Below are positions 1,054 through 11,421 of a DNA stretch of 11,781 nt, piece after piece. The stretch is from IMG/VR virus record IMGVR_UViG_3300026877_000093, positions 1 through 11,781 of that record; one strand, given 5' to 3'. The position numbers and the translations under genes are program-made. Under the pieces are notes generated by a model. It was given only the letters and a program-made list of their open reading frames with translations. It was not told the DNA's origin and ran no database searches. How positions within the stretch are numbered: the stretch's first letter is position 1; each line of letters opens with the position of its first letter.

Positions 1054-1101
1054 AATTACAAATGTGCAGTTAAAAAACAAAAATTCACAATACGCATAAT
1101 G

Positions 1102-1137
1102 TATATATATGTCATACACTGTAATAATTGTTGGTAA
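1102..1137 (+). promoter_or_regulatory. TATA box followed by the rudiviral GTC motif (promoter of the GNAT-Hjr-ORF70 unit)
   Basis: TATATATAT-GTC at 1102-1113. GTC directly after the TATA box is a known SIRV promoter feature. Confidence 0.6.
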
Positions 1138-2211: not shown

Positions 2212-5200
2212 ATGAGTACAATATTTGACTTAGGAGCTATTGGTACGTTTTTCTCTGATGAGATATCAGCGTTAGAAAACTTTGCAAATTGGGTAAGTTC
2301 AACATTTATAAATTTTATGAACGCAATAACCACAGATATACAAAATACATTTAGTTTTATAGGCCAAGCAATTAGCGATATACCTACTTTTATGCAAAAT
2401 ATTGCAACTGATTTTCTCACAATTTTACAAAATTTTGTCCAAACTGCGATACCAATTATACAAGGTTTTTTAAGTTGGCTTGAACAACAAATTGTAAACG
2501 CTTTTCAAGTTTTATCATCAATCGCTTCACAATTTATAAATGATGCTTATGGTTTTTTTCAAAACATTGCAAATGTGTTTTCGCAAATAATTGCAACAGT
2601 TGTGCAAGACTTTTTATCCGGCTTTGGTTCAAATATGTTGCGCATAGCGCCGGCAATTTCACAAATTGTACAATTTTTAACTCCTTTTATAGCTCCGATA
2701 ACAATTGGCAAATTTTTACCTGCAATTTCAGAAAAATTAGCTGAAATTTTACCTGAAATTGAAATTTCTTTGGCACCAATTGGTTTAGGTGGTAGAATCC
2801 CAATAAAATTTGGAGAAATTATAAAAGCTTTTGCAGAATCTGGAGTTGATTTTTTAAATGAAGTTAGACAAGAAATACAAGTTACTCTTAAGGAATTTTT
2901 AAAAGAACCTTTTGTTGCAGATTTTAAAATAACTGCAAGAGAAATATTTAATAACATAGGTCTTGGAGATTTACCGTTTGCTGATCCACCATTTCGAGAA
3001 ATTGCGAAATGGGTAGCTGTTAGGTCATTTTCCGAAATTCAAGACCATTTAAGTGAAACAATTTTATTAACTGGTTTCCCCGCTTGGTTTACTAACGCTT
3101 ATTTAACACCTCCGGCTAATGATTTTGTACCTTTAAACCCTATATTTAAACCCGTCTCAATTCGTGATGTTATTTTAGGTGCACAATTCGGAATTTTGAA
3201 TTTTGACGCTGTTTCACAATATTCATATAATAATTTAATAACTCCAAGAACTGCACAATTAATGTATAAAAATGAGACGGCACGTTTATTGCAAAAAGCA
3301 GTTGAAGAAGGCATTAGACAATTTGTAGTAACACCTTCGCAAGCTTATGAAGAAATTATTAAAAATATTAATTTAGCCGGCAAAGACCTATTTTTAAAAG
3401 TTTTTGACCTTGAATACCAATACGCAACACAAAGACTTATAAGGCAATTTTTAAGATCACTTTTAAGTAGGGCATTAACAAATTTTGGAAGGCCTTACAT
3501 TGATTTAAAGTTTTTACAAACAACAATACAAACTTTATTTAAAAGTTTAGGCTATCCAACACAGGTAGAACAAGTTTTTAATATCATGATTGAAGAATCG
3601 CAAATTGTTTATACTAACCAATTGTTATTAACGCAATTACAACAAATTGTGAGATTGGGGATATTTAATGAAAAAGAAATAAAATCAGAATTAAAAGCTA
3701 ATAATTTTAATGAAAATGTAGCACTAGCAATTTTACAAGGAGAGCTTAAATACATACAATTACAACATTTGCTAAAAGAATTTCAGTTTAAATTACAAAA
3801 TTATATTATAAGTAGTAGAGACGCAGAAAAAGGATTAAAAAGCTTAGGTTTCGATAATTCAATAATTTCTGAGACAATTTTTGAGTACCAAACTGCACCA
3901 CTTATAAAATATCAAATTTCGCAAATTGAAAGTTTAGCCAGAAAAGGGTATTTAAGTGTTGACGAAATTAAAAAAGAGCTAAATGCAATAGGTGTTATAA
4001 AAGAGTTTGAAGATGTGTTTTTAAATTACCTAAACCAAGAAATTGCCATATCTTCAACTTTAAATATACTAAGACAACAATTAAGAAGCTTTTTAGTTGA
4101 TCCCAAATTTGTGGAAACAGAATTAAGAAAATTAAAAGTAAATGATTATTTGGTAAATGAAATAATACAAGAAGAATATAATATAAACATTGCAAAACTC
4201 CAATTTTCATTAATTGAAAGTATTGCAAAAGTTCTTTATTTCGACCAACAACAATTAAATACAGAACTAGGAAAAATTGTAAAAGATAAAACTGCAATTG
4301 ACATTTATACACAAAAGTTTTATTTTGAATACATATATCCAAAAATTATAAGTTATTATACACAGTTGGCAAGACACGGCATTTCTGCAAATATTTCAAA
4401 ATTACCGAAAGATATTGTAGAATATGAAATTAAACCGGCAATTCAAGTTTTTCAATTAACAACAGAATTAGAATATATAAAAACATTATTAAAAGATTTA
4501 CAAATAACTCCAACTTCTGCAATAAATAGACTTGAAAATTTAGGTATGCAAAAAGATTTAGCTAATTTATTTGTACAAACTTACATACCCACATTTTACA
4601 GTTTACACACAATTATTAGTAATATAGTACAAGGAGAACTTTTCAAAGTTGGTAAAATACCAGTAAACTTAGGTAATGCCGAAAATGAATTAAGAAAATT
4701 AGGAATTCCAGATAATCAAATAAAAGTGTTGTTGGAACAATACGCTTCAACATTTGGTTTGGAAATTTGGAGAAAATATTTACCTTCACTTTCTAACATT
4801 GAAAATGCAATCAAATATAATTATCCGCTTAATCAACTTGTTGAATATTCGTTTATACCATCAGAACTGTTAAATTTACACGTTAATTTATTTCAACAAA
4901 TTTTTATAGGAGAATATGTACAATCTCTTAAAAATGAATATATCCAACTTTTAGTTTACGGCGTGCAAAATACACAGCTAGAAAGTTTATTAAAGCAATA
5001 TGGTATTAATGACGTTTTATTAGGTATTTACAAATTATCAGCACAAATTAGAAAATTATTAATGGCTTACCAAGAACTTTACATTACACCTTCAAAAGCT
5101 TTAACAATAAGTGAATATGTATCAAATCCAACACAGTTATTGCAAAAAGTATTTAGTGAATTTCAAGTTCCTAGTGATTTACAAAATACTTATCTCGAGT

Positions 5201-5422: not shown

Positions 5423-5485
5423 ATATACATAATATTATAAATGAGGTGAGTACAGTTTTTTACGTCAACTCACATAATATAACAT
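5423..5485 (+). promoter_or_regulatory. Promoter region of ORF530-ORF316: upstream element ATATACATAATAT, T-rich box and GTC
   Basis: TTTTTTAC-GTC with G at -22. The 13-bp element at -63..-51 recurs at the same offset upstream of ORF269. Confidence 0.65.
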
Positions 5486-7078
5486 ATGGCTTTACCATAC
5501 ACTGTTAATTATAAATTGCCCTTAGAATATTTAACTTTGCAAGAGTGGAATAACTTCATACAAAATTTATTATTTTTAAATCAATATGGCTCAGCTCAAT
5601 TGTTACAATATTTCCAAAACGGTAGTTTTCAAAATTTAAATGAAGTAATTGCAAAGTATTTAAGTGTTGCAAGTTTGAAAATAAACGGTTATAACGCTTT
5701 ACATAACTTGTCAGAACCACAAGCGTATACTTTTGGCACGGGAAACCAACAACCGTTTCAAAACATGGCAAACAGACCGTTTTTTGGATTAGAAACTATA
5801 ACACCGCCAACTCTAAACTTTCAAGTACAATTACAACCGTTGGCTAAACAATTGCAATTATTAATTCCAAATTTAATAAGTAAAATTACCGTACCAAACT
5901 ATGTAGCAGGCACTCAATTTCAATTTTCCGGTTCTGCGACTGTACAAAATTTAATACAAAATTATTTTGACCCTTCATATTTACAAACTTGGAGAGAAAT
6001 AATAATTCAAAATTTAGGCAATAACGCAGTGCAAATAAACAATGCAATATATTTAATGCCTAAACAATGTTTAAAAATAACTGCGAGTTCTCCATCAGAA
6101 ATACAATTAACTGCACAAAGTCCGACACTTTTAAGCGAAACAATTGGTTTTATTGGGACTCCAATATCTACTTATGTAATTACAATAACAAATAATCAGC
6201 CAAACCCAACACCTTCACCGTTTCAACAATTGCTAATTCTAAATTTATCAACTCTTTTATCAAGTGCAAGTCAGCTTTTAAACTTGCAATTTTGTTTAGA
6301 CCCTCAATGTAATACTCCATTATATGCTTGGATTGAACAAAATAATTTAACTAATGCTTATATTTGGGTAAAAATCCCAACTTCAATTCCAGCAAATGGT
6401 TCATTAACTATTTATATGTTTATACAAAATTCAATTCAATACCCTTACACTGGAATGGCCCCATATTTATCTTCTACATATGCACAATATGATAATGGAG
6501 GAAATGTATTTAATTTTTATGATAATTTTAAAGGGACTACATTAAACCCGGCATGGACAGTCCCTTCAGGTTTTAGTTACCAAGTAAATAACGGTTTTAT
6601 CGCTGAACCTTCCAGCGGTTCTGCTCCTTCTGCATATAATTTAAATGTTCAAGAAACATCATCGATAATAGCAGAATGGGCTTTAAATATGTCATCTACC
6701 ACATATTCTAGAAATTATACATATTTTCAGCTAAATAGGTATACAGGATACTCAAACATGCATATGTTAGGCGTATCAGGGTCTGATACACTTTTTAATA
6801 ATAATACAAAAATTAATACTGTTTCTATTTCTTCGTCAGGAATACAAATTTTTGGAGTACGGAATGGTGGGACAACAGTAACATGGTATTATGAAGGTAA
6901 TTCGTATACTAATAATTCTGTAACTGCAGAAACTGATTATCTTGCACTTGGATGGGCTTATAACGCACAAAGTTACAATTTTCCTACAATATATTGGGTT
7001 AGGACTAGAGCTTATCCTCCAAATGGAGTAATGCCTTCAAATTCTCAACCGCAACAAACTATAGTATTTGTAGGTTAA
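5486..7078 (+). CDS. Minor virion protein (SIRV2 ORF564, gp39-like) with a C-terminal DUF2341-like / lectin-like region, 530 aa
   Basis: Follows the fibre gene. From aa ~229 it has DUF2341-type motifs (ITITNNQ..PTPSPFQQ, PLYAWIE, IWVKIP.SIPANGSLTIYM, YDNG.NVF.FYDNF) and ends in WVRTRAYPPNGVMPS. Confidence 0.8.
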   Translation: MALPYTVNYKLPLEYLTLQEWNNFIQNLLFLNQYGSAQLLQYFQNGSFQNLNEVIAKYLSVASLKINGYNALHNLSEPQAYTFGTGNQQPFQNMANRPFFGLETITPPTLNFQVQLQPLAKQLQLLIPNLISKITVPNYVAGTQFQFSGSATVQNLIQNYFDPSYLQTWREIIIQNLGNNAVQINNAIYLMPKQCLKITASSPSEIQLTAQSPTLLSETIGFIGTPISTYVITITNNQPNPTPSPFQQLLILNLSTLLSSASQLLNLQFCLDPQCNTPLYAWIEQNNLTNAYIWVKIPTSIPANGSLTIYMFIQNSIQYPYTGMAPYLSSTYAQYDNGGNVFNFYDNFKGTTLNPAWTVPSGFSYQVNNGFIAEPSSGSAPSAYNLNVQETSSIIAEWALNMSSTTYSRNYTYFQLNRYTGYSNMHMLGVSGSDTLFNNNTKINTVSISSSGIQIFGVRNGGTTVTWYYEGNSYTNNSVTAETDYLALGWAYNAQSYNFPTIYWVRTRAYPPNGVMPSNSQPQQTIVFVG

Positions 7079-7085
7079 TAAAACA

Positions 7086-8036
7086 ATGACCATCGCGACT
7101 ACTACTCAATGCACTGATGTTTACCAAATTGCTAATTTGTTATCTCCACCAAGTAAATATTCAATAATTTCTTCTTCACTATGGAATGAAATTGTACAAG
7201 ATTTATATTTAACATATAGCGTATTTCAATATATTAATTTTTTATCAGCATTTCCATATACAGATTATATATTTCCTGCAATTCAACAATTTAATAATTT
7301 TCCGCAAAATTTTACGCCTTATACTTTTACCCCTTTACTTAATGCCCAAACGGGTACACCGCTTAACGCTGATGATTTTAACAACTTAATAAACGCAATT
7401 ATAGAATTAGCAAATATGGCTAATATACAATTACAAACAAAATTAAATTATGTACAACCGAACGAAATTGTTAAAGCTTCGCAATTTGCAAATGTAATTT
7501 ATGCAGTAAATCAATTATTAACTTTTAATTATAATACTTATTTTATTTTAAGTTGTTCAGGTGCCGAATTTATTAACCTACTAAGCACGCAAACTGCATT
7601 TTTAAATGTATTAATATACAACTTAAGCAATAACCTATCAGTTTCAAACAATACTTATATAAAAAATTTACTTTTAAATTCTTTGAGTCAAAACATTTAT
7701 AACTATGGAATAATTGATAAATTAGTAATTGTATCAAGTAATGGAAACATTTATCTTTATAATGATGCATTTATTAACTCTTTAACCATAAATAATAATA
7801 TTCAAAATATTTATGTAAATGATAGTTCTTCAATTGAAACATTATCAATTTCATACAATACTGGTAAAATTTACCTTAATGGAAATGCATTTATTAATAC
7901 TTTAACCATAAATACCCAAAATGGTTATATTTATGTAAATGATAATTCCGTAATAAATAATTTAATTTGTAATACAAATGTAGGAGCAGTTATTATAGCA
8001 CCTACTGCAGTAGTTATAAATAACCAGTGCACTTAA
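7086..8036 (+). CDS. Conserved rudiviral protein (SIRV2 ORF309-like) with C-terminal 20-aa beta-solenoid-type repeats, 316 aa
   Basis: Starts 7 nt after the ORF530 stop. Asn/Ile-rich repeats of the form IY(L/V)NxxxxIxxLxIxxxxG. Confidence 0.75.
   Translation: MTIATTTQCTDVYQIANLLSPPSKYSIISSSLWNEIVQDLYLTYSVFQYINFLSAFPYTDYIFPAIQQFNNFPQNFTPYTFTPLLNAQTGTPLNADDFNNLINAIIELANMANIQLQTKLNYVQPNEIVKASQFANVIYAVNQLLTFNYNTYFILSCSGAEFINLLSTQTAFLNVLIYNLSNNLSVSNNTYIKNLLLNSLSQNIYNYGIIDKLVIVSSNGNIYLYNDAFINSLTINNNIQNIYVNDSSSIETLSISYNTGKIYLNGNAFINTLTINTQNGYIYVNDNSVINNLICNTNVGAVIIAPTAVVINNQCT
7741..7980 (+). repeat. Imperfect intragenic tandem repeat, 4 x 60 bp arranged as 2 x 120 bp
   Basis: ATGCATTTATTAA..CTTTAACCATAAATA is shared by the units at 7741 and 7861. 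ATATTTATGTAAATGATA is shared by the units at 7801 and 7921. Confidence 0.8.
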
Positions 8037-8513
8037 TTATAATTTACAAAATACAAATTCTCTATTATCATCAGTTATGAAAGTCAAAATTGTACCGTAA
8101 AGTTTTTTCATCAATTCAAATCTATTCTCAGTCCAGTCATGAATAGCAATACAATATTGTTTATATTTCTGCAATTCTTCAAATCTCAAATTTTTTTCAC
8201 ATCCTTCACAATCCATAATAAAAATGTCAGTATTCGGATACTCTTTACCAGTCCATTCCCCATTTATCTCAACTTTTTCACAAATTTGAAATTCTTTGCA
8301 AACTTTTTCTTTAAACCTCTTGTTTAACTCACCACTTTTTTCAAAACCAATTACTTTTTTAGCGTCTTTCAAAAGAAAATACAAAGCAGAACTTCCGCAA
8401 TCATTTCCAATTATTGTAATTGTTTTATCTTTAACATCTAATTTTCCATATGCTAAATTAAATTCATACCAATAACAACATCCTAATTTACAAAAATAAT
8501 CGTTATAATTCAT
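8037..8513 (-). CDS. SAM-dependent methyltransferase, FkbM-like (SIRV2 ORF158b-like), 158 aa
   Basis: Motif I-like TITIIGNDCGSSALYF, then AKKVIGFE (acidic end of beta-2) and FIMDCEGCE (FkbM K.D.EG.E-type). Size and synteny match. Confidence 0.85.
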   Translation of the reverse strand: MNYNDYFCKLGCCYWYEFNLAYGKLDVKDKTITIIGNDCGSSALYFLLKDAKKVIGFEKSGELNKRFKEKVCKEFQICEKVEINGEWTGKEYPNTDIFIMDCEGCEKNLRFEELQKYKQYCIAIHDWTENRFELMKKLYGTILTFITDDNREFVFCKL

Positions 8514-9319
8514 GAACTTATTACCTCAAACAAAGCGTAAACTGTAGTAGGGCCTGTGGCCCAAGCGTAAACGTTTGCCGGGTTATTTACATGTATCTCT
8601 AAACTATCATTTGGCAAAATCGGAAAGTTATTATAAATGTTGTTACCAATGTAAACTATATAATTACTTAAGTTTTGTAAAATTATTCTTGCAGTTTGCA
8701 ATGCCGAACCGGAATAAAGCGGGTTAGGTGTAGTACCAACATTAAGTTGTAAACCTTGTATAGTAGGAGGTGCTAAATATAACGTAAGCTGGTTTATTGT
8801 ATTTGCCAAACCGACAGTTGCTAAATAAATATAAAAAAGTGAATAAGCTAAATAATTAGAAACAGCATAAACTGCATTTTGCAAAGGAATTCCTAATTGT
8901 TGAGATACAGAATTTATTAAATTGTAAAATGACGCATAAAAATTTTGTAAATCTTGTTGTACTACGTTTGAAATTTCTTGCGGTAAATTAACAAGCGAAT
9001 TATAAAGTTGTTCATTACTGTACAAAATTGCGTTTATTTGGTCATTAGCAGTTGAAATAAAACCAGCAATATAAATAGGATCAAGTTCAGTTATTACAGG
9101 CTGGCCAGCAACATAAACATCATTATAAAAATAACCGGCATCGGCAATTATCCAATTCGGGATTACCAAATTCCCATTTTGGAGAATTGATGTTACTGCA
9201 TTTCCGCCGGTTTGATATAATTGGTTTAATAACAAAACGGCAGTATTCCACATACTTGATGTCAAACGCTGGAATGGTGAAGCCAACAAATCCGAAATTG
9301 ATGTATAAGTTACACTCAC
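8510..9319 (-). CDS. Conserved rudiviral protein (SIRV2 ORF269-like), 269 aa from a GTG start; probable paralogue of the ORF530 N-terminal part
   Basis: GTG at 9319 gives 269 aa (MSVTYTSISDLLASPFQRLTSSMWN...). The extension to 9364 in the ORF track runs through the promoter. Its stop overlaps the methyltransferase start (ATGA). Confidence 0.8.
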   Translation of the reverse strand: MSVTYTSISDLLASPFQRLTSSMWNTAVLLLNQLYQTGGNAVTSILQNGNLVIPNWIIADAGYFYNDVYVAGQPVITELDPIYIAGFISTANDQINAILYSNEQLYNSLVNLPQEISNVVQQDLQNFYASFYNLINSVSQQLGIPLQNAVYAVSNYLAYSLFYIYLATVGLANTINQLTLYLAPPTIQGLQLNVGTTPNPLYSGSALQTARIILQNLSNYIVYIGNNIYNNFPILPNDSLEIHVNNPANVYAWATGPTTVYALFEVISS

Positions 9320-9389
9320 AATTATTATTTTCTTACTTGGCAAAAATAAACATGCACAGCACATATATTATATTATGTATATGTGCTGT
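9320..9389 (-). promoter_or_regulatory. Promoter region of ORF269-methyltransferase, including a 12-bp inverted repeat
   Basis: TTTATTTTT-GCC with G at -22, ATATACATAATAT at -63..-51, and inverted repeat ACAGCACATATA (9356-9367) / TATATGTGCTGT (9378-9389). Confidence 0.65.
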
Positions 9390-9420
9390 AACACTTGTTG
9401 TAAATTAGTCCCGTAAAAAT

Positions 9421-9456
9421 TGTTATTTGTCATAAATTACAAATATAATTTGGTAA
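9421..9456 (+). promoter_or_regulatory. Putative GTC-type promoter of the glycosyltransferase
   Basis: TGTTATTT-GTCATA-N16-TGGTAA, matching the layout upstream of the GNAT gene. Confidence 0.45.
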
Positions 9457-9463
9457 CAAGAAA

Positions 9464-10534
9464 ATGAGTAAAACAATTTATTATGTACATCCTATGCACC
9501 ACGATGTTTCATTTAAATTTGTAGCAAAAGAACATATAAAAATGTTAAAAGAAAAATATACAGTTTATGAAATACCAATTTTATCTTTTTACCAATTTAC
9601 ACCTTTTAAATTTCCAATTTCCATAATTCATCCATTTTTTTACAGTATGTGGTATTGGGGAAAAATTGAATTTTCATTCTTTGAAACTTACAGAACTAAA
9701 GTAAGTGCCGTTTTAGGTGTAGAAGTTGCAGATACTAATAAAATTGCCGAAAAATACATCAATTATGCAAATAATTACGCCGATGCAATAATATTAAATT
9801 CGCAGTGGTCAATTAACGCATTTATAAACTCCGGCTTAAAAATACCAGCTTATAAAGTCGTACATAATTTTAACCCAAAATTATTAGCAAATGATAAAGA
9901 ATTAGAAATAGATAAACACGTTTCTTATATTGAAAAAATAAAAAATGAAAAGAAAATCAAATTAATATTTATTTCATTATGGCACTCGGATTTTAGAAAA
10001 GGAACCGATATTTTTCATGAAATAGCAAAAAAACTACAAAAAGAAAGAGATGATATTTACTTTTTAGTTAAAAGCGGTATGCCAAAAAATGATTTTAATG
10101 ATTTAAAAATGTTTAATGTAACAGGAGTAGTAAGTTTTGATAATATAGTTAAAATGTACAGAATTTCGGATTTATATTTATTAACTTCAAGAGGCGGGAG
10201 TTTTGAATTAAACGGTTTAGAAGCGTTTATTTCAAAAATTCCCGCAATTGCGACAAAAGGCGGGGCGTGGGAAGAATATTACCCATCTCAATTAAAAGAT
10301 TTACTAGTTGATCCTTGCAATTCTCCAACAGTTTTGCCGGGTAACCCAATACATGTAGGCCAGGGCGTGGAAATGTGTATTGATAAAGCAGTAAACAAAA
10401 TTTTGAAAGTTTTAGATAATTATGATAATTACAAAGCTAAAATTGAAGAAAATCATAGTTTTTGGCTAGAAAATTTTAGTTACCAAAATGTGAAAAAACA
10501 ACTAATAAATGTAGTTGAGAAATACATAAAATAA
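9464..10534 (+). CDS. GT-B fold glycosyltransferase (GT4 / Glycos_transf_1-like; SIRV2 ORF356-like), 356 aa
   Basis: Motifs ADAIILNSQWS, RKGTD, MYRISDLYLLTSRGGSFELNGLEA and PAIATKGGAWEEY. Same length as SIRV ORF356. Confidence 0.92.
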   Translation: MSKTIYYVHPMHHDVSFKFVAKEHIKMLKEKYTVYEIPILSFYQFTPFKFPISIIHPFFYSMWYWGKIEFSFFETYRTKVSAVLGVEVADTNKIAEKYINYANNYADAIILNSQWSINAFINSGLKIPAYKVVHNFNPKLLANDKELEIDKHVSYIEKIKNEKKIKLIFISLWHSDFRKGTDIFHEIAKKLQKERDDIYFLVKSGMPKNDFNDLKMFNVTGVVSFDNIVKMYRISDLYLLTSRGGSFELNGLEAFISKIPAIATKGGAWEEYYPSQLKDLLVDPCNSPTVLPGNPIHVGQGVEMCIDKAVNKILKVLDNYDNYKAKIEENHSFWLENFSYQNVKKQLINVVEKYIK

Positions 10535-11211: not shown

Positions 11212-11314
11212 TTTGATTATAATCAAAGTAATGAAATAAATTATAGATGAAAAACAAATAAAATTAGAACTTATAATTATAATCACAATAATGCAATAAA
11301 TTATTGACAAAAAA
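11212..11314. repeat. 16-bp perfect palindrome overlapping an imperfect 39-bp direct repeat with a 60-bp period
   Basis: TTTGATTATAATCAAA at 11212-11227. 11216-11254 and 11276-11314 match at 33/39 positions. Confidence 0.65.
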
Positions 11315-11421
11315 ATAGAAAAAAAGAAAATAATTAGAAATAAGAAAGAATATAAAAATACCAAAACTAATAACAAGAAAAGAAAACAAAAAAGAAAAAA
11401 TATTTAACTTAAATTAAAAAA

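What the first reader, a model, noticed from the sequence alone, without database searches (positions are those of the whole stretch)
5423..9382. Two inward-facing, ungapped homologous promoters bracket the four-gene cassette
Upstream of ORF530 (+): ATATACATAATATtataaatgaggtgag. Upstream of ORF269 (-): ATATACATAATATaatatatgtgctgtg. The 13-mer is identical and lies at exactly -63..-51 from each start codon. Identity is 23/28 over the element and 42/63 up to the start codon with no gaps, although the proteins are highly diverged. This implies a selected binding site for a shared (late?) regulator. The copies are also inverted repeats around a ~4-kb block, so inversion is conceivable. A near copy (ATATACATTAT, minus strand 1106-1096) sits 10 nt closer to the start of the ORF488-like virion gene.
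Basis: seen in the sequence. Interest (0 to 1): 0.7.

Follow-up and report, generated by a model that had tools for sequence, protein, structure and literature searches.

The report
Shared upstream promoter element of rudiviruses
The two identical 13-base sequences are real and under strong selection, but they are two copies of an upstream promoter element that rod-shaped Sulfolobus viruses place before many of their central, structural-region genes, most likely as a docking site for a transcription factor, not a special bracket or inversion switch for this four-gene block.

Summary
Each copy is at -63..-51 from its start codon, with 23/28 and 42/63 ungapped identity (random 63-mer pairs: 18.7 +/- 3.8, maximum 36).

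The window is an uncultivated rudivirus contig, about 75-77% identical to SIRV8, 9 and 11.

The pairing is not special. The 12-mer core occurs 11 times in SIRV2 and 9 times in SIRV8 (0.14-0.16 expected). It lies upstream of the capsid gene, ORF399, ORF335/55, ORF110 and ORF488, as well as ORF564 and ORF269. All these promoters share one layout:
- the 13-mer;
- a degenerate mirror half;
- a T-rich TATA block centred about 26.5 nt before the ATG;
- the rudiviral GTC trinucleotide;
- no Shine-Dalgarno sequence, so the mRNA is probably leaderless.

Any two such promoters share 36-48/63 identity. Across 17-19 distinct orthologous promoters, mean per-column agreement with the consensus base is 97% in the 13-mer and 61-76% in the flanks.

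The best reading is an upstream factor-binding site at about -63..-41 that supports a weak TATA box. The host activator Sta1 is the leading candidate binder. In SIRV1 it footprints about 30 bp upstream of the capsid core promoter, where this element lies.

Inversion is not supported: 23 SIRV-like genomes or contigs (this window's contig included) keep the same orientation.

The parts
5423..5435 (+). Upstream promoter element, copy 1 (ATATACATAATAT), at -63..-51 of ORF530
   Evidence: In 17 distinct orthologous promoters, mean per-column agreement with the consensus is 97%.
5436..5445 (+). Degenerate mirror half of the element (TATAAATGAG). It matches 7/10 of the ideal ATTATGTATA when the last two bases of the 13-mer are counted.
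   Evidence: The consensus is TATGTATAAG, with 88% agreement among orthologues. SIRV8 P564 and SIRV2 P134 carry a perfect 20-bp palindrome.
5456..5466 (+). Inferred core promoter of ORF530: T-rich TATA block TTTTTTAC followed by the rudiviral GTC trinucleotide
   Evidence: The block centre is about 26.5 nt before the ATG and there is no Shine-Dalgarno sequence. The GTC feature is reported in Kessler 2004, as cited in PMC5569661. The TSS has not been mapped.
5486..7078 (+). ORF530, homologue of SIRV2 ORF564 (contains DUF2341). Its first ~235 aa or so are paralogous to ORF269.
7086..8036 (+). ORF316, homologue of SIRV2 ORF309; second gene of the rightward unit, preceded by an SD-like AGGT
8037..8513 (-). 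ORF158, homologue of the SAM-dependent methyltransferase SIRV2 ORF158a; second gene of the leftward unit, preceded by GAGGT
   Evidence: Pfam gave no hit for the window copy. The name comes from the RefSeq annotation of the homologues.
8510..9319 (-). ORF269 (GTG start at 9319), a core rudivirus gene of unknown function
9339..9349 (-). Inferred core promoter of ORF269: T-block TTATTTTT followed by GCC (GTC in most orthologues)
9360..9369 (-). Degenerate mirror half of copy 2 (AATATATGTG)
   Evidence: It forms part of a palindrome with 12-bp arms spanning 9389-9356 (z = -3.2).
9370..9382 (-). Upstream promoter element, copy 2 (ATATACATAATAT), at -63..-51 of ORF269. It sits between the divergent ORF269 and glycosyltransferase promoters.
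   Evidence: In 19 distinct orthologous promoters, mean per-column agreement with the consensus is 97%.
9420..9431 (+). Separate TATA-like block plus GTC of the divergent glycosyltransferase gene (ATG at 9464)
   Evidence: Spacing is the same as in ordinary SIRV2 TATA+GTC promoters.
1094..1106 (-). Third copy (ATATACATTATGC), 53 nt before the ATG (1053) of the ORF488-like virion gene. Its reverse complement overlaps the TATA+GTC of the divergent ORF157.
   Evidence: The same variant is present in SIRV2.

Best explanation
The 13-mer is the best-conserved part of a roughly 23-bp, imperfectly palindromic upstream promoter element. SIRV-like rudiviruses place it about 20 bp upstream of a weak, T-rich TATA box in a whole class of promoters, including those of the capsid gene, ORF399, ORF335/55, ORF110, ORF488, ORF564 and ORF269.

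In the window it heads two convergent two-gene units, ORF530-ORF316 and ORF269-ORF158. A third copy heads the ORF488-like gene.

Transcription is inferred to start at or within a few bases of the start codon (leaderless mRNA). That would explain why the element sits at a fixed -63 from the start codon in different genes.

The element is inferred to bind a dimeric transcription factor that helps TBP/TFB load onto the weak TATA box. Genes carrying it would then be switched on together, separately from the terminal early genes.

The leading candidate binder is the host activator Sta1 (Lrs14 family). A virus-encoded factor is the alternative: the C2H2 zinc-finger protein ORF55, or the RHH proteins SvtR and gp21.

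Shown here: sequence, conservation, distribution and layout. Inferred: TSS position, activation, and the identity of the binder.
For: Over-representation:
- The 12-mer core TATACATWATAT is 42- to 78-fold over-represented: window 2 observed vs 0.05 expected, SIRV2 11 vs 0.14, SIRV8 9 vs 0.16.
- Eight of 10 distinct SIRV2 sites lie in the 21% of the genome that is non-coding.

Distribution:
- In SIRV2 the exact 13-mer lies 63-72 nt upstream of ORF399, ORF134, ORF110, ORF564 and ORF269. One-mismatch copies serve the divergent pair ORF335/ORF55, ORF176 shares the ORF269 copy, and a variant sits at ORF488/ORF154. SIRV8 shows the same pattern.

Common layout:
- 13-mer + 10 + 10 + 8-nt T-block + GTC + 19 nt = 63 nt, in unrelated genes. 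Pairwise identity is 36-48/63 whatever the gene or genome.
- Agreement with the consensus by segment: 13-mer 0.97, mirror half 0.84-0.88, T-block 0.83-0.87, GTC 0.74-0.82, spacer and remainder 0.61-0.76.
- A near-identical relative (L022; ORF530 97.7% identical) has a rewritten spacer but the same 13-mer and spacing.

Core promoter assignment:
- In SIRV1 P134 the published core-promoter oligo Reg2 maps to -40..-11, that is, to the T-block (PMC1635249).
- First genes lack a Shine-Dalgarno sequence, whereas internal genes have GAGGT or AGGT.

Sta1 link:
- Sta1 was pulled down by SIRV1 promoters 56, 134 and 399 but not by SSV T6, activated promoters 56 and 134, and footprinted the core promoter plus a site about 30 bp upstream (PMC1635249).
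- In P134 the element starts at -70. It is the consensus match best placed for the reported upstream footprint; the other upstream matches are at -82 and -130.
- The 399 fragment holds two copies of the element and the 56 fragment a half-element.
- Established knowledge: archaeal activators such as Ptr2 act from sites upstream of BRE/TATA, while repressors usually overlap BRE/TATA or the TSS.
Against: - No TSS data were available for these genes. Kessler 2004, Okutan 2013 and Quax 2013 are not held, so the leaderless start and the TATA assignment rest on position only.
- The published Sta1 consensus ATNT-N8-WNAT does not discriminate: 92 matches in the window against 79 +/- 12 by chance.
- That consensus does not specify the ACAT core, which is the most conserved part of the element.
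- Sta1 belongs to the Lrs14 family, now discussed as nucleoid-associated proteins with limited specificity (titles and abstracts).
- SSRV1 infects a Sta1-bearing host yet keeps the element only at its capsid gene.
- The perfect palindrome is absent from every Sulfolobales species-representative genome among the hits, so no host regulon is visible.
- Window P530 also contains a good TATA-like TTATAAAT directly after the 13-mer (5436-5443), which could serve as an alternative core promoter.
Confidence: 0.6

Rival explanations
1. The element is an operator for a virus-encoded regulator rather than for host Sta1. Candidates are the C2H2 zinc-finger protein ORF55, the RHH proteins SvtR/ORF56b or gp21/aCcr1, or an unknown protein. 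It might act as a repressor or a timing switch for middle/late genes.
For: - Near-invariance of a 13-mer fits a highly specific binder better than the loose Sta1 consensus.
- SIRV2 ORF55 is a C2H2 zinc finger (Pfam E 3.8e-6). By tblastn it is found in SIRV8 but in none of the other seven genomes compared, including SRV and SBRV1, which carry degenerate forms of the element. Its own promoter shares an element with P335.
- The Icerudivirus mirror half AATGTATTAG contains the aCcr1 box core TGTATTA, which gp21 binds (PMC9976892).
- The P56b promoter carries a half-element.
Against: - A position 20 bp upstream of the TATA box is atypical for archaeal repressors.
- The window copies lack GTATTA.
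- gp21 and SvtR-type RHH proteins occur in genera that lack the element (for ORF59b; annotations).
- tblastn is weak for proteins of about 55 aa, so the ORF55 co-occurrence is soft evidence.
- A related single zinc finger, AFV1p06, prefers GC-rich DNA (PMC3541406).
Confidence: 0.22
2. The 13-mer, alone or with the adjacent TTATAAAT in P530, is itself a TATA/BRE core promoter. It would drive a transcript with a 5' leader of about 30-35 nt, and the T-rich block would lie in the initiation or leader region.
For: - The element is A+T-rich.
- Its reverse complement overlaps the TATA+GTC of the divergent ORF157/ORF154 promoter.
- Window P530 has TTATAAAT at 5436-5443.
Against: - In SIRV1 P134 the published core-promoter oligo maps to the T-block, not the element (PMC1635249).
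- The GTC that marks the end of rudiviral TATA boxes follows the T-block.
- In the distant genera the TATA box TTTTTAA sits at the position homologous to the T-block.
- There is no Shine-Dalgarno sequence in the would-be leader.
- TTATAAAT is not conserved even in the closest relative, L022.
Confidence: 0.1
3. The similarity is neutral leftover homology from the duplication that produced ORF269 and the N-terminal domain of ORF530/564, with the promoter copied along with the gene.
For: The proteins are paralogues, and the alignment runs ungapped up to the start codon.
Against: - The paralogues share about 24-26% protein identity, and both exist in every rudivirus genus. Neutral DNA of that age would be randomised.
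- Distant genera have plain TATA promoters without the element before both genes.
- Unrelated genes such as ORF399, the capsid gene and ORF110 carry the same promoter at the same or similar spacing and with equal identity.
Confidence: 0.04
4. The two copies act as inverted repeats that allow inversion of the ~4-kb block lying between them.
For: There are 13 bp of perfect inverted identity (23/28) at the two ends of the block.
Against: - All 23 SIRV-like genomes or contigs holding both genes (this window's contig included) have the same convergent orientation.
- The SRV/SBRV1 order (309-like, 564-like, 269-like, methyltransferase, all co-directional) cannot be produced by inversion between the elements.
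- Pfam finds no recombinase domain in the block.
- The same repeat occurs at 7-9 other places per genome, which would make the genome unstable if it were recombinogenic.
Confidence: 0.02

Closest known systems
Sta1 upstream binding site in SIRV1 promoters 134 and 56 (Kessler et al. 2006, PMC1635249)
   Same: Same virus family and the same promoter class. The site is an imperfect inverted repeat upstream of the core promoter. In SIRV1 P134 the element ATATACATTATATTAT at -70 is the consensus match that best fits the reported footprint about 30 bp upstream of the core promoter. Both window copies fit ATNT-N8-WNAT.
   Different: The published consensus is far looser than the observed 13-mer and matches at chance frequency. 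Binding to ORF564- or ORF269-type promoters has never been tested. The figure showing the footprint could not be read, so the identification rests on position.
Rudiviral TATA-box + GTC promoters (Kessler et al. 2004, as cited in PMC5569661)
   Same: Both window promoters have a T-rich block followed by GTC (P530) or GCC (P269; GTC in most orthologues), as do most SIRV2 promoters.
   Different: That description covers only the core promoter. The upstream 13-mer marks a subset of about 7-9 promoters per genome with weak T-blocks and no leader.
Conserved early-gene (anti-defence) regulatory sequence of rudiviruses, proposed to be controlled by Aca8 (PMC11065993)
   Same: The logic is the same: one highly conserved regulatory sequence precedes many unrelated genes of one virus and defines an expression class.
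   Different: The sequence differs (strong BRE plus TTTAWATA). The genes differ too (terminal small genes), as does the proposed regulator (Aca8, a repressor). The window element marks central and structural-region genes.
Upstream activating sites of archaeal activators such as Ptr2
   Same: A palindromic site upstream of BRE/TATA, proposed to aid TBP recruitment at a weak TATA box.
   Different: The factor is unrelated or unknown, and no functional data exist for this element.
aCcr1 box (AGTATTA / TGTATTAT) bound by SIRV2 gp21 (PMC9976892)
   Same: The Icerudivirus mirror half (AATGTATTAG) contains TGTATTA.
   Different: Neither the two window copies nor the Usarudivirus copies contain GTATTA.

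Membership tests
Class of SIRV-like promoters with the upstream ATATACATWATAT element | Exact or near-exact 13-mer lying 50-80 nt upstream of a start codon, oriented towards the gene | tested here: met
   Both copies are exact, at -63..-51. A third copy lies at -53.
Class of SIRV-like promoters with the upstream ATATACATWATAT element | T-rich block plus GTC-type trinucleotide starting 33-41 nt after the start of the element and ending about 20 nt before the start codon | tested here: met
   P530: TTTTTTAC-GTC. P269: TTATTTTT-GCC. The register is identical to SIRV2 P399 and P564 and to SIRV8 P564 and P269.
Class of SIRV-like promoters with the upstream ATATACATWATAT element | Conservation of the element in orthologous promoters above that of the flanks | tested here: met
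   0.97 against 0.61-0.76 in 17 and 19 distinct sequences.
Archaeal core promoter (BRE/TATA about 26 nt upstream of the TSS) | TATA box centred about 26-27 nt upstream of a mapped transcription start | not testable with these tools
   The T-block centre is 26.5 nt before the start codon, but no TSS data were accessible.
Sta1 binding site | Match to ATNT-N8-(A/T)NAT | tested here: met
   5423-5438 and 9382-9367 both match. However, the pattern occurs 92 times against 79 expected, so the match carries no weight.
Sta1 binding site | Location about 30 bp upstream of the core promoter, as in the SIRV1 P134 footprint | tested here: met
   The element ends 20 nt before the T-block. In SIRV1 P134 the homologous element is at -70..-55 and the core oligo at -40..-11.
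Sta1 binding site | Motifs TTATT, CANGNA and TTATT, which are essential in the sso0777 promoter (PMC2175319) | tested here: not met
   No CANGNA flanked by two TTATT motifs in either window copy, judged by reading the sequences.
Sta1 binding site | Physical binding and activation by Sta1 | not testable with these tools
   Requires EMSA, footprinting or in vitro transcription.
aCcr1 box | AGTATTA / TGTATTAT within the promoter | tested here: not met
   Absent from both window promoters. Present only in Icerudivirus versions.
Invertible DNA segment | Inverted repeats at both ends | tested here: met
   13 bp exact, 23/28, which is very short.
Invertible DNA segment | Recombinase or invertase gene in or next to the segment | tested here: not met
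   Pfam finds only DUF2341 and a glycosyltransferase domain. The nearest nuclease is the Holliday junction resolvase homologue at 1605-1970.
Invertible DNA segment | Both orientations present among genomes or reads | tested here: not met
   0 of 23 SIRV-like genomes or contigs (this window's contig included) show the inverted form. Reads were not available.
Rudiviral early-gene regulatory sequence (PMC11065993) | Purine-rich BRE followed by TTTAWATA | tested here: not met
   Neither promoter has it. SIRV2 early promoters look different.

The most novel reading that the evidence does not exclude
The 13-mer is the operator of a dedicated, still unidentified virus-encoded or virus-recruited factor. 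That factor would define a 'structural/late' regulon in SIRV-like rudiviruses, the counterpart of the Aca8-controlled early regulon. The roughly 63-bp promoter module would spread between genes of one genome by recombination. Hints for this: the Icerudivirus-only 30-nt variant shared by P269, P335 and the distal P564 copy, and the presence of the element only before the capsid gene in Hoswirudiviruses.
Probability: 0.25. Interest if true: 0.6.

Novelty: new member of a known kind. Interest (0 to 1): 0.4.

Why it matters
Temporal control of archaeal virus genes is poorly understood. Apart from the early-gene sequence described in 2024 and the GTC motif, few cis-elements are defined.

The work here gives a sharply defined, testable motif: ATATACATWATAT with a mirror half, about 20 bp upstream of a weak TATA box. 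It also gives a list of roughly 7-9 target promoters per genome in cultivable model viruses (SIRV1, SIRV2, SIRV8).

That makes one experiment straightforward: find what binds the element, and ask whether it switches on capsid and virion-associated genes together. The work also predicts leaderless transcription of these genes and corrects several annotated start codons.

For this particular window, the result means the 'bracketing' pair is ordinary for its virus group.

Tried and rejected
- Neutral duplication relic: rejected. The same promoter precedes unrelated genes, and distant genera with both paralogues lack the element.
- Inversion switch: rejected on comparative grounds.
- Match to the Sta1 consensus as evidence: rejected, because the pattern occurs at chance frequency.
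- aCcr1 box: absent from the window copies.
- Helical phasing of the -53 / -63 / -72 spacings: considered. The offsets from the element to the GTC are 37, 41, 50 and 58, which do not fit a clean 10.5-bp series, so no claim is made.
- Search for the perfect 20-bp palindrome in 185,579 species-representative genomes: 73 hits, none from Sulfolobales. The one 'Aeropyrum' contig is unrelated.
- Rfam: no RNA family anywhere in the window.
- Single-strand folding: only the P269 copy forms a notable hairpin (z = -3.2) and P530 does not (z = -0.2). A cruciform is therefore not a shared feature.
- Literature search for the motif string: no relevant paper.
- Not held in the library: Kessler 2004, Guilliere 2009, Okutan 2013 and Quax 2013. 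Published TSS and timing data could therefore not be checked.

Full report
**Identity of the window.** The window is an 11.8-kb contig of an uncultivated rudivirus (IMGVR_UViG_3300026877_000093). It is about 75-77% identical in DNA to the Yellowstone SIRV8, 9 and 11 and about 74% identical to SIRV1 and SIRV2. Gene order matches SIRV2:
- ORF1066 corresponds to ORF1070.
- ORF530 corresponds to ORF564.
- ORF316 corresponds to ORF309.
- ORF158(-) corresponds to methyltransferase ORF158a.
- ORF269(-) corresponds to ORF269.
- The glycosyltransferase corresponds to ORF356.

**Check of the observation.**
- ATATACATAATAT lies at 5423-5435(+) and 9382-9370(-), and nowhere else exactly.
- Both copies are at -63..-51 from their start codons.
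- Ungapped identity is 23/28 and 42/63. For 200,000 random pairs of 63-mers from the window the mean is 18.7, sd 3.8, maximum 36.
- The GTG start of ORF269 at 9319 is confirmed by more than 30 homologues that start at the aligned codon.
- The near copy at 1106-1096(-) lies 53 nt before the ATG of the ORF488-like gene.

**The pair is not special.**
- The 12-mer core TATACATWATAT occurs 11 times in SIRV2 and 9 times in SIRV8, against 0.14-0.16 expected under a second-order Markov model.
- Eight of 10 distinct SIRV2 sites fall in the 21% of the genome that is non-coding.
- Listing the 110 nt upstream of every SIRV2 gene puts the exact 13-mer before ORF399 (-63), the capsid gene ORF134 (-70), ORF110 (-72), ORF564 (-63) and ORF269 (-72). 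One-mismatch copies serve the divergent pair ORF335/ORF55. ORF176 shares the ORF269 copy. A variant serves ORF488/ORF154. SIRV8 shows the same set.
- Aligned on the element, these promoters share one layout: 13-mer, a 10-nt degenerate mirror half (consensus TATGTATAAG), a 10-nt spacer, an 8-nt T-rich block, GTC (or GGC/GCC), then 19 nt to the start codon. That totals 63 nt.
- Any two such promoters share 36-48/63 ungapped identity, whatever the gene or genome. WIN_P530 against WIN_P269 scores 42, and against its own SIRV8 orthologue 41. WIN_P269 scores 46 against the SIRV11 P564 but 38 against its own orthologue. SIRV2 P399, from an unrelated permease-like gene, scores 46 against SIRV2 P564.
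- The 42/63 figure is therefore a property of the promoter class.

**Selection.**
- In 17 distinct ORF530-type and 19 distinct ORF269-type promoters from genomes and metagenomic contigs, mean agreement with the consensus base is 0.97 in the 13-mer. It is 0.84-0.88 in the mirror half, 0.83-0.87 in the T-block, 0.74-0.82 in the GTC, and 0.61-0.76 elsewhere.
- The closest relative (L022; ORF530 97.7% identical) has a rewritten spacer but the same 13-mer and spacing.

**Relation to the gene duplication.**
- ORF269 is a distant paralogue of the first ~235 residues or so of ORF530/564 (BLASTP E 1e-4; hhalign 89.5%, E 2e-6).
- Both paralogues are present in all rudivirus genera.
- ARV1, ARV2, SSRV1, MRV1 and SMRV1 have plain TTTTTAA-type TATA boxes about 30 nt before both genes and no element.
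- SRV and SBRV1 carry degenerate or reversed versions. SSRV1 and MRV1 keep a palindromic copy only before the capsid gene.
- The shared promoter is therefore not a leftover of the duplication. It is a regulatory design maintained, and probably spread, within the SIRV-like clade.

**Which part is the core promoter.**
- The T-block followed by GTC matches the 'TATA box plus virus-specific GTC' described for SIRV1 and SIRV2 (Kessler 2004, as cited in PMC5569661). It is seen in most other SIRV2 promoters.
- In SIRV1 P134 the oligonucleotide taken from the Sta1-protected core promoter region (Reg2, PMC1635249) maps to -40..-11, that is, onto the T-block.
- In the 63-nt promoters the T-block centre lies 26.5 nt before the start codon, which is the canonical TATA-to-TSS distance in archaea.
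- The first genes lack a Shine-Dalgarno sequence, while the internal genes ORF316 and ORF158 have AGGT and GAGGT.
- I infer leaderless transcripts. This would explain the fixed distance of the element from the start codon. It remains inference, because no TSS data could be read.

**Mechanism.**
- The element then occupies about -63..-41 relative to the TSS, upstream of BRE/TATA. That is the position from which known archaeal activators act.
- The T-blocks (TTTATTTNT, TTTTTTAC) are poorer than the early-gene TTTAWATA (PMC11065993), which suggests dependence on a helper factor.
- Sta1, a host winged-helix protein, is the leading candidate. It was pulled down by SIRV1 promoters 56, 134 and 399 but not by SSV T6, and it activated promoters 56 and 134, especially at limiting TBP/TFB. 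It footprinted the core promoter and a site about 30 bp upstream (PMC1635249).
- In SIRV1 P134 the upstream matches to its consensus are at -70, -82 and -130. The element at -70 is the one best placed for that footprint.
- The 399 fragment carries two copies of the element and the 56 fragment a half-element.

**Caveats on the Sta1 assignment.**
- The consensus ATNT-N8-WNAT occurs at chance frequency (92 observed against 79 +/- 12 expected).
- It ignores the invariant ACAT core.
- The motifs essential in the host sso0777 promoter (PMC2175319) are absent from the window copies.
- The Lrs14 family is now discussed as nucleoid-associated.

**Virus-encoded alternatives.**
- The C2H2 zinc-finger protein ORF55. 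By tblastn it is found in SIRV8 but in none of the other seven genomes compared, and its own promoter sits next to an element.
- SvtR.
- gp21/aCcr1, whose box TGTATTA appears in the Icerudivirus mirror half but not in the window (PMC9976892).

**Inversion.**
- All 23 SIRV-like genomes or contigs that hold both genes (this window's contig included) keep them convergent.
- SRV and SBRV1 have the 309-like gene before the 564-like gene, with ORF269 and the methyltransferase co-directional. Inversion between the two elements cannot generate that arrangement.
- There is no recombinase domain in the block.
- The repeat occurs at many other sites per genome.

**Verdict.** The 'bracketing pair' and inversion framing does not. 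The element is a member of a promoter class typical of SIRV-like rudiviruses, and it probably corresponds to the upstream Sta1 site reported in 2006 for the capsid promoter. What may be new is the sharp definition of the motif, its regulon-wide distribution and the fixed leaderless layout. That is of moderate interest and is directly testable in SIRV2.

Noticed in passing
window 9320-9463: The window has no homologue of SIRV2 ORF176 / SIRV8 ORF48 (tblastn), although that gene is present in all nine rudivirus genomes compared. Here the glycosyltransferase gene directly follows the ORF269 promoter.
   Followed up: partly
window 5486-6190 and 8513-9319: ORF269 is a distant paralogue of the N-terminal ~235 residues or so of ORF530/ORF564 (BLASTP E 1e-4; hhalign 89.5%, E 2e-6). 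Both have unknown function, and both are core rudivirus genes.
   Followed up: yes
window 7712-7948: ORF316 contains a 117-nt tandem direct repeat (7712-7828 and 7832-7948, 74% identical), that is, an internal ~39-residue repeat in the protein.
   Followed up: no
window 9356-9389 (-): The ORF269 copy of the element sits inside a longer palindrome, ACAGCACATATA-N10-TATATGTGCTGT (12-bp arms; DNA fold z = -3.2). The ORF530 copy has no comparable symmetry.
   Followed up: partly
window 1094-1127: The reverse complement of the third element copy (GCATAATGTATAT) runs into TATATAT-GTC. This looks like the TATA+GTC of the divergent ORF157 gene, so one sequence may serve both directions. SIRV2 ORF154 shows the same arrangement.
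   Followed up: partly
L003 (SIRV2) 14711-14745, 23679-23710, 27745-27779: Icerudiviruses share a ~30-nt extended version (ATTATAT-TTATTATATGAATTAT-RRG) at P269, P335 and a second, distal copy upstream of ORF564. This suggests that a promoter module has been copied within the genome.
   Followed up: partly
L018 (SSRV1) ~5013-5035; L019 (MRV1) ~4421-4443: Hoswirudiviruses lack the element before their ORF564 and ORF269 homologues. They keep a palindromic copy (CATATACAAAATATTATGTATATGG) about 60 nt upstream of the major capsid protein gene.
   Followed up: partly
L022 ~7470-7535 (close relative, IMGVR_UViG_3300026625_000038): A virus with identical ORF269 and 97.7% identical ORF530 has a very different 25-nt spacer between the element and the T-block in the ORF530 promoter. 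The 13-mer and the overall length are unchanged.
   Followed up: partly
L003 23785/23800 and ~18740-18830; L017 9336/9402: Several GenBank start codons look misplaced. SIRV2 ORF564 is annotated at TTG 23785, but the conserved ATG is at 23800. The SIRV2 ORF488 start lies upstream of its own promoter element. The ARV2 gp18 start at 9336 should be at 9402 by homology.
   Followed up: partly
window 11216-11323: Two 48-nt direct repeats (79% identical, 60 nt apart) lie in the region of small ORFs at the right end of the window. They might be repeated regulatory sequences of small genes.
   Followed up: no
L004 (SIRV8) 22033-22848 and homologues in SIRV4/5/9/10/11: Usarudiviruses carry an extra ~271-aa gene between the ORF1070-like and ORF564-like genes. 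It has no BLASTP match to the neighbouring proteins and is absent from the window.
   Followed up: partly
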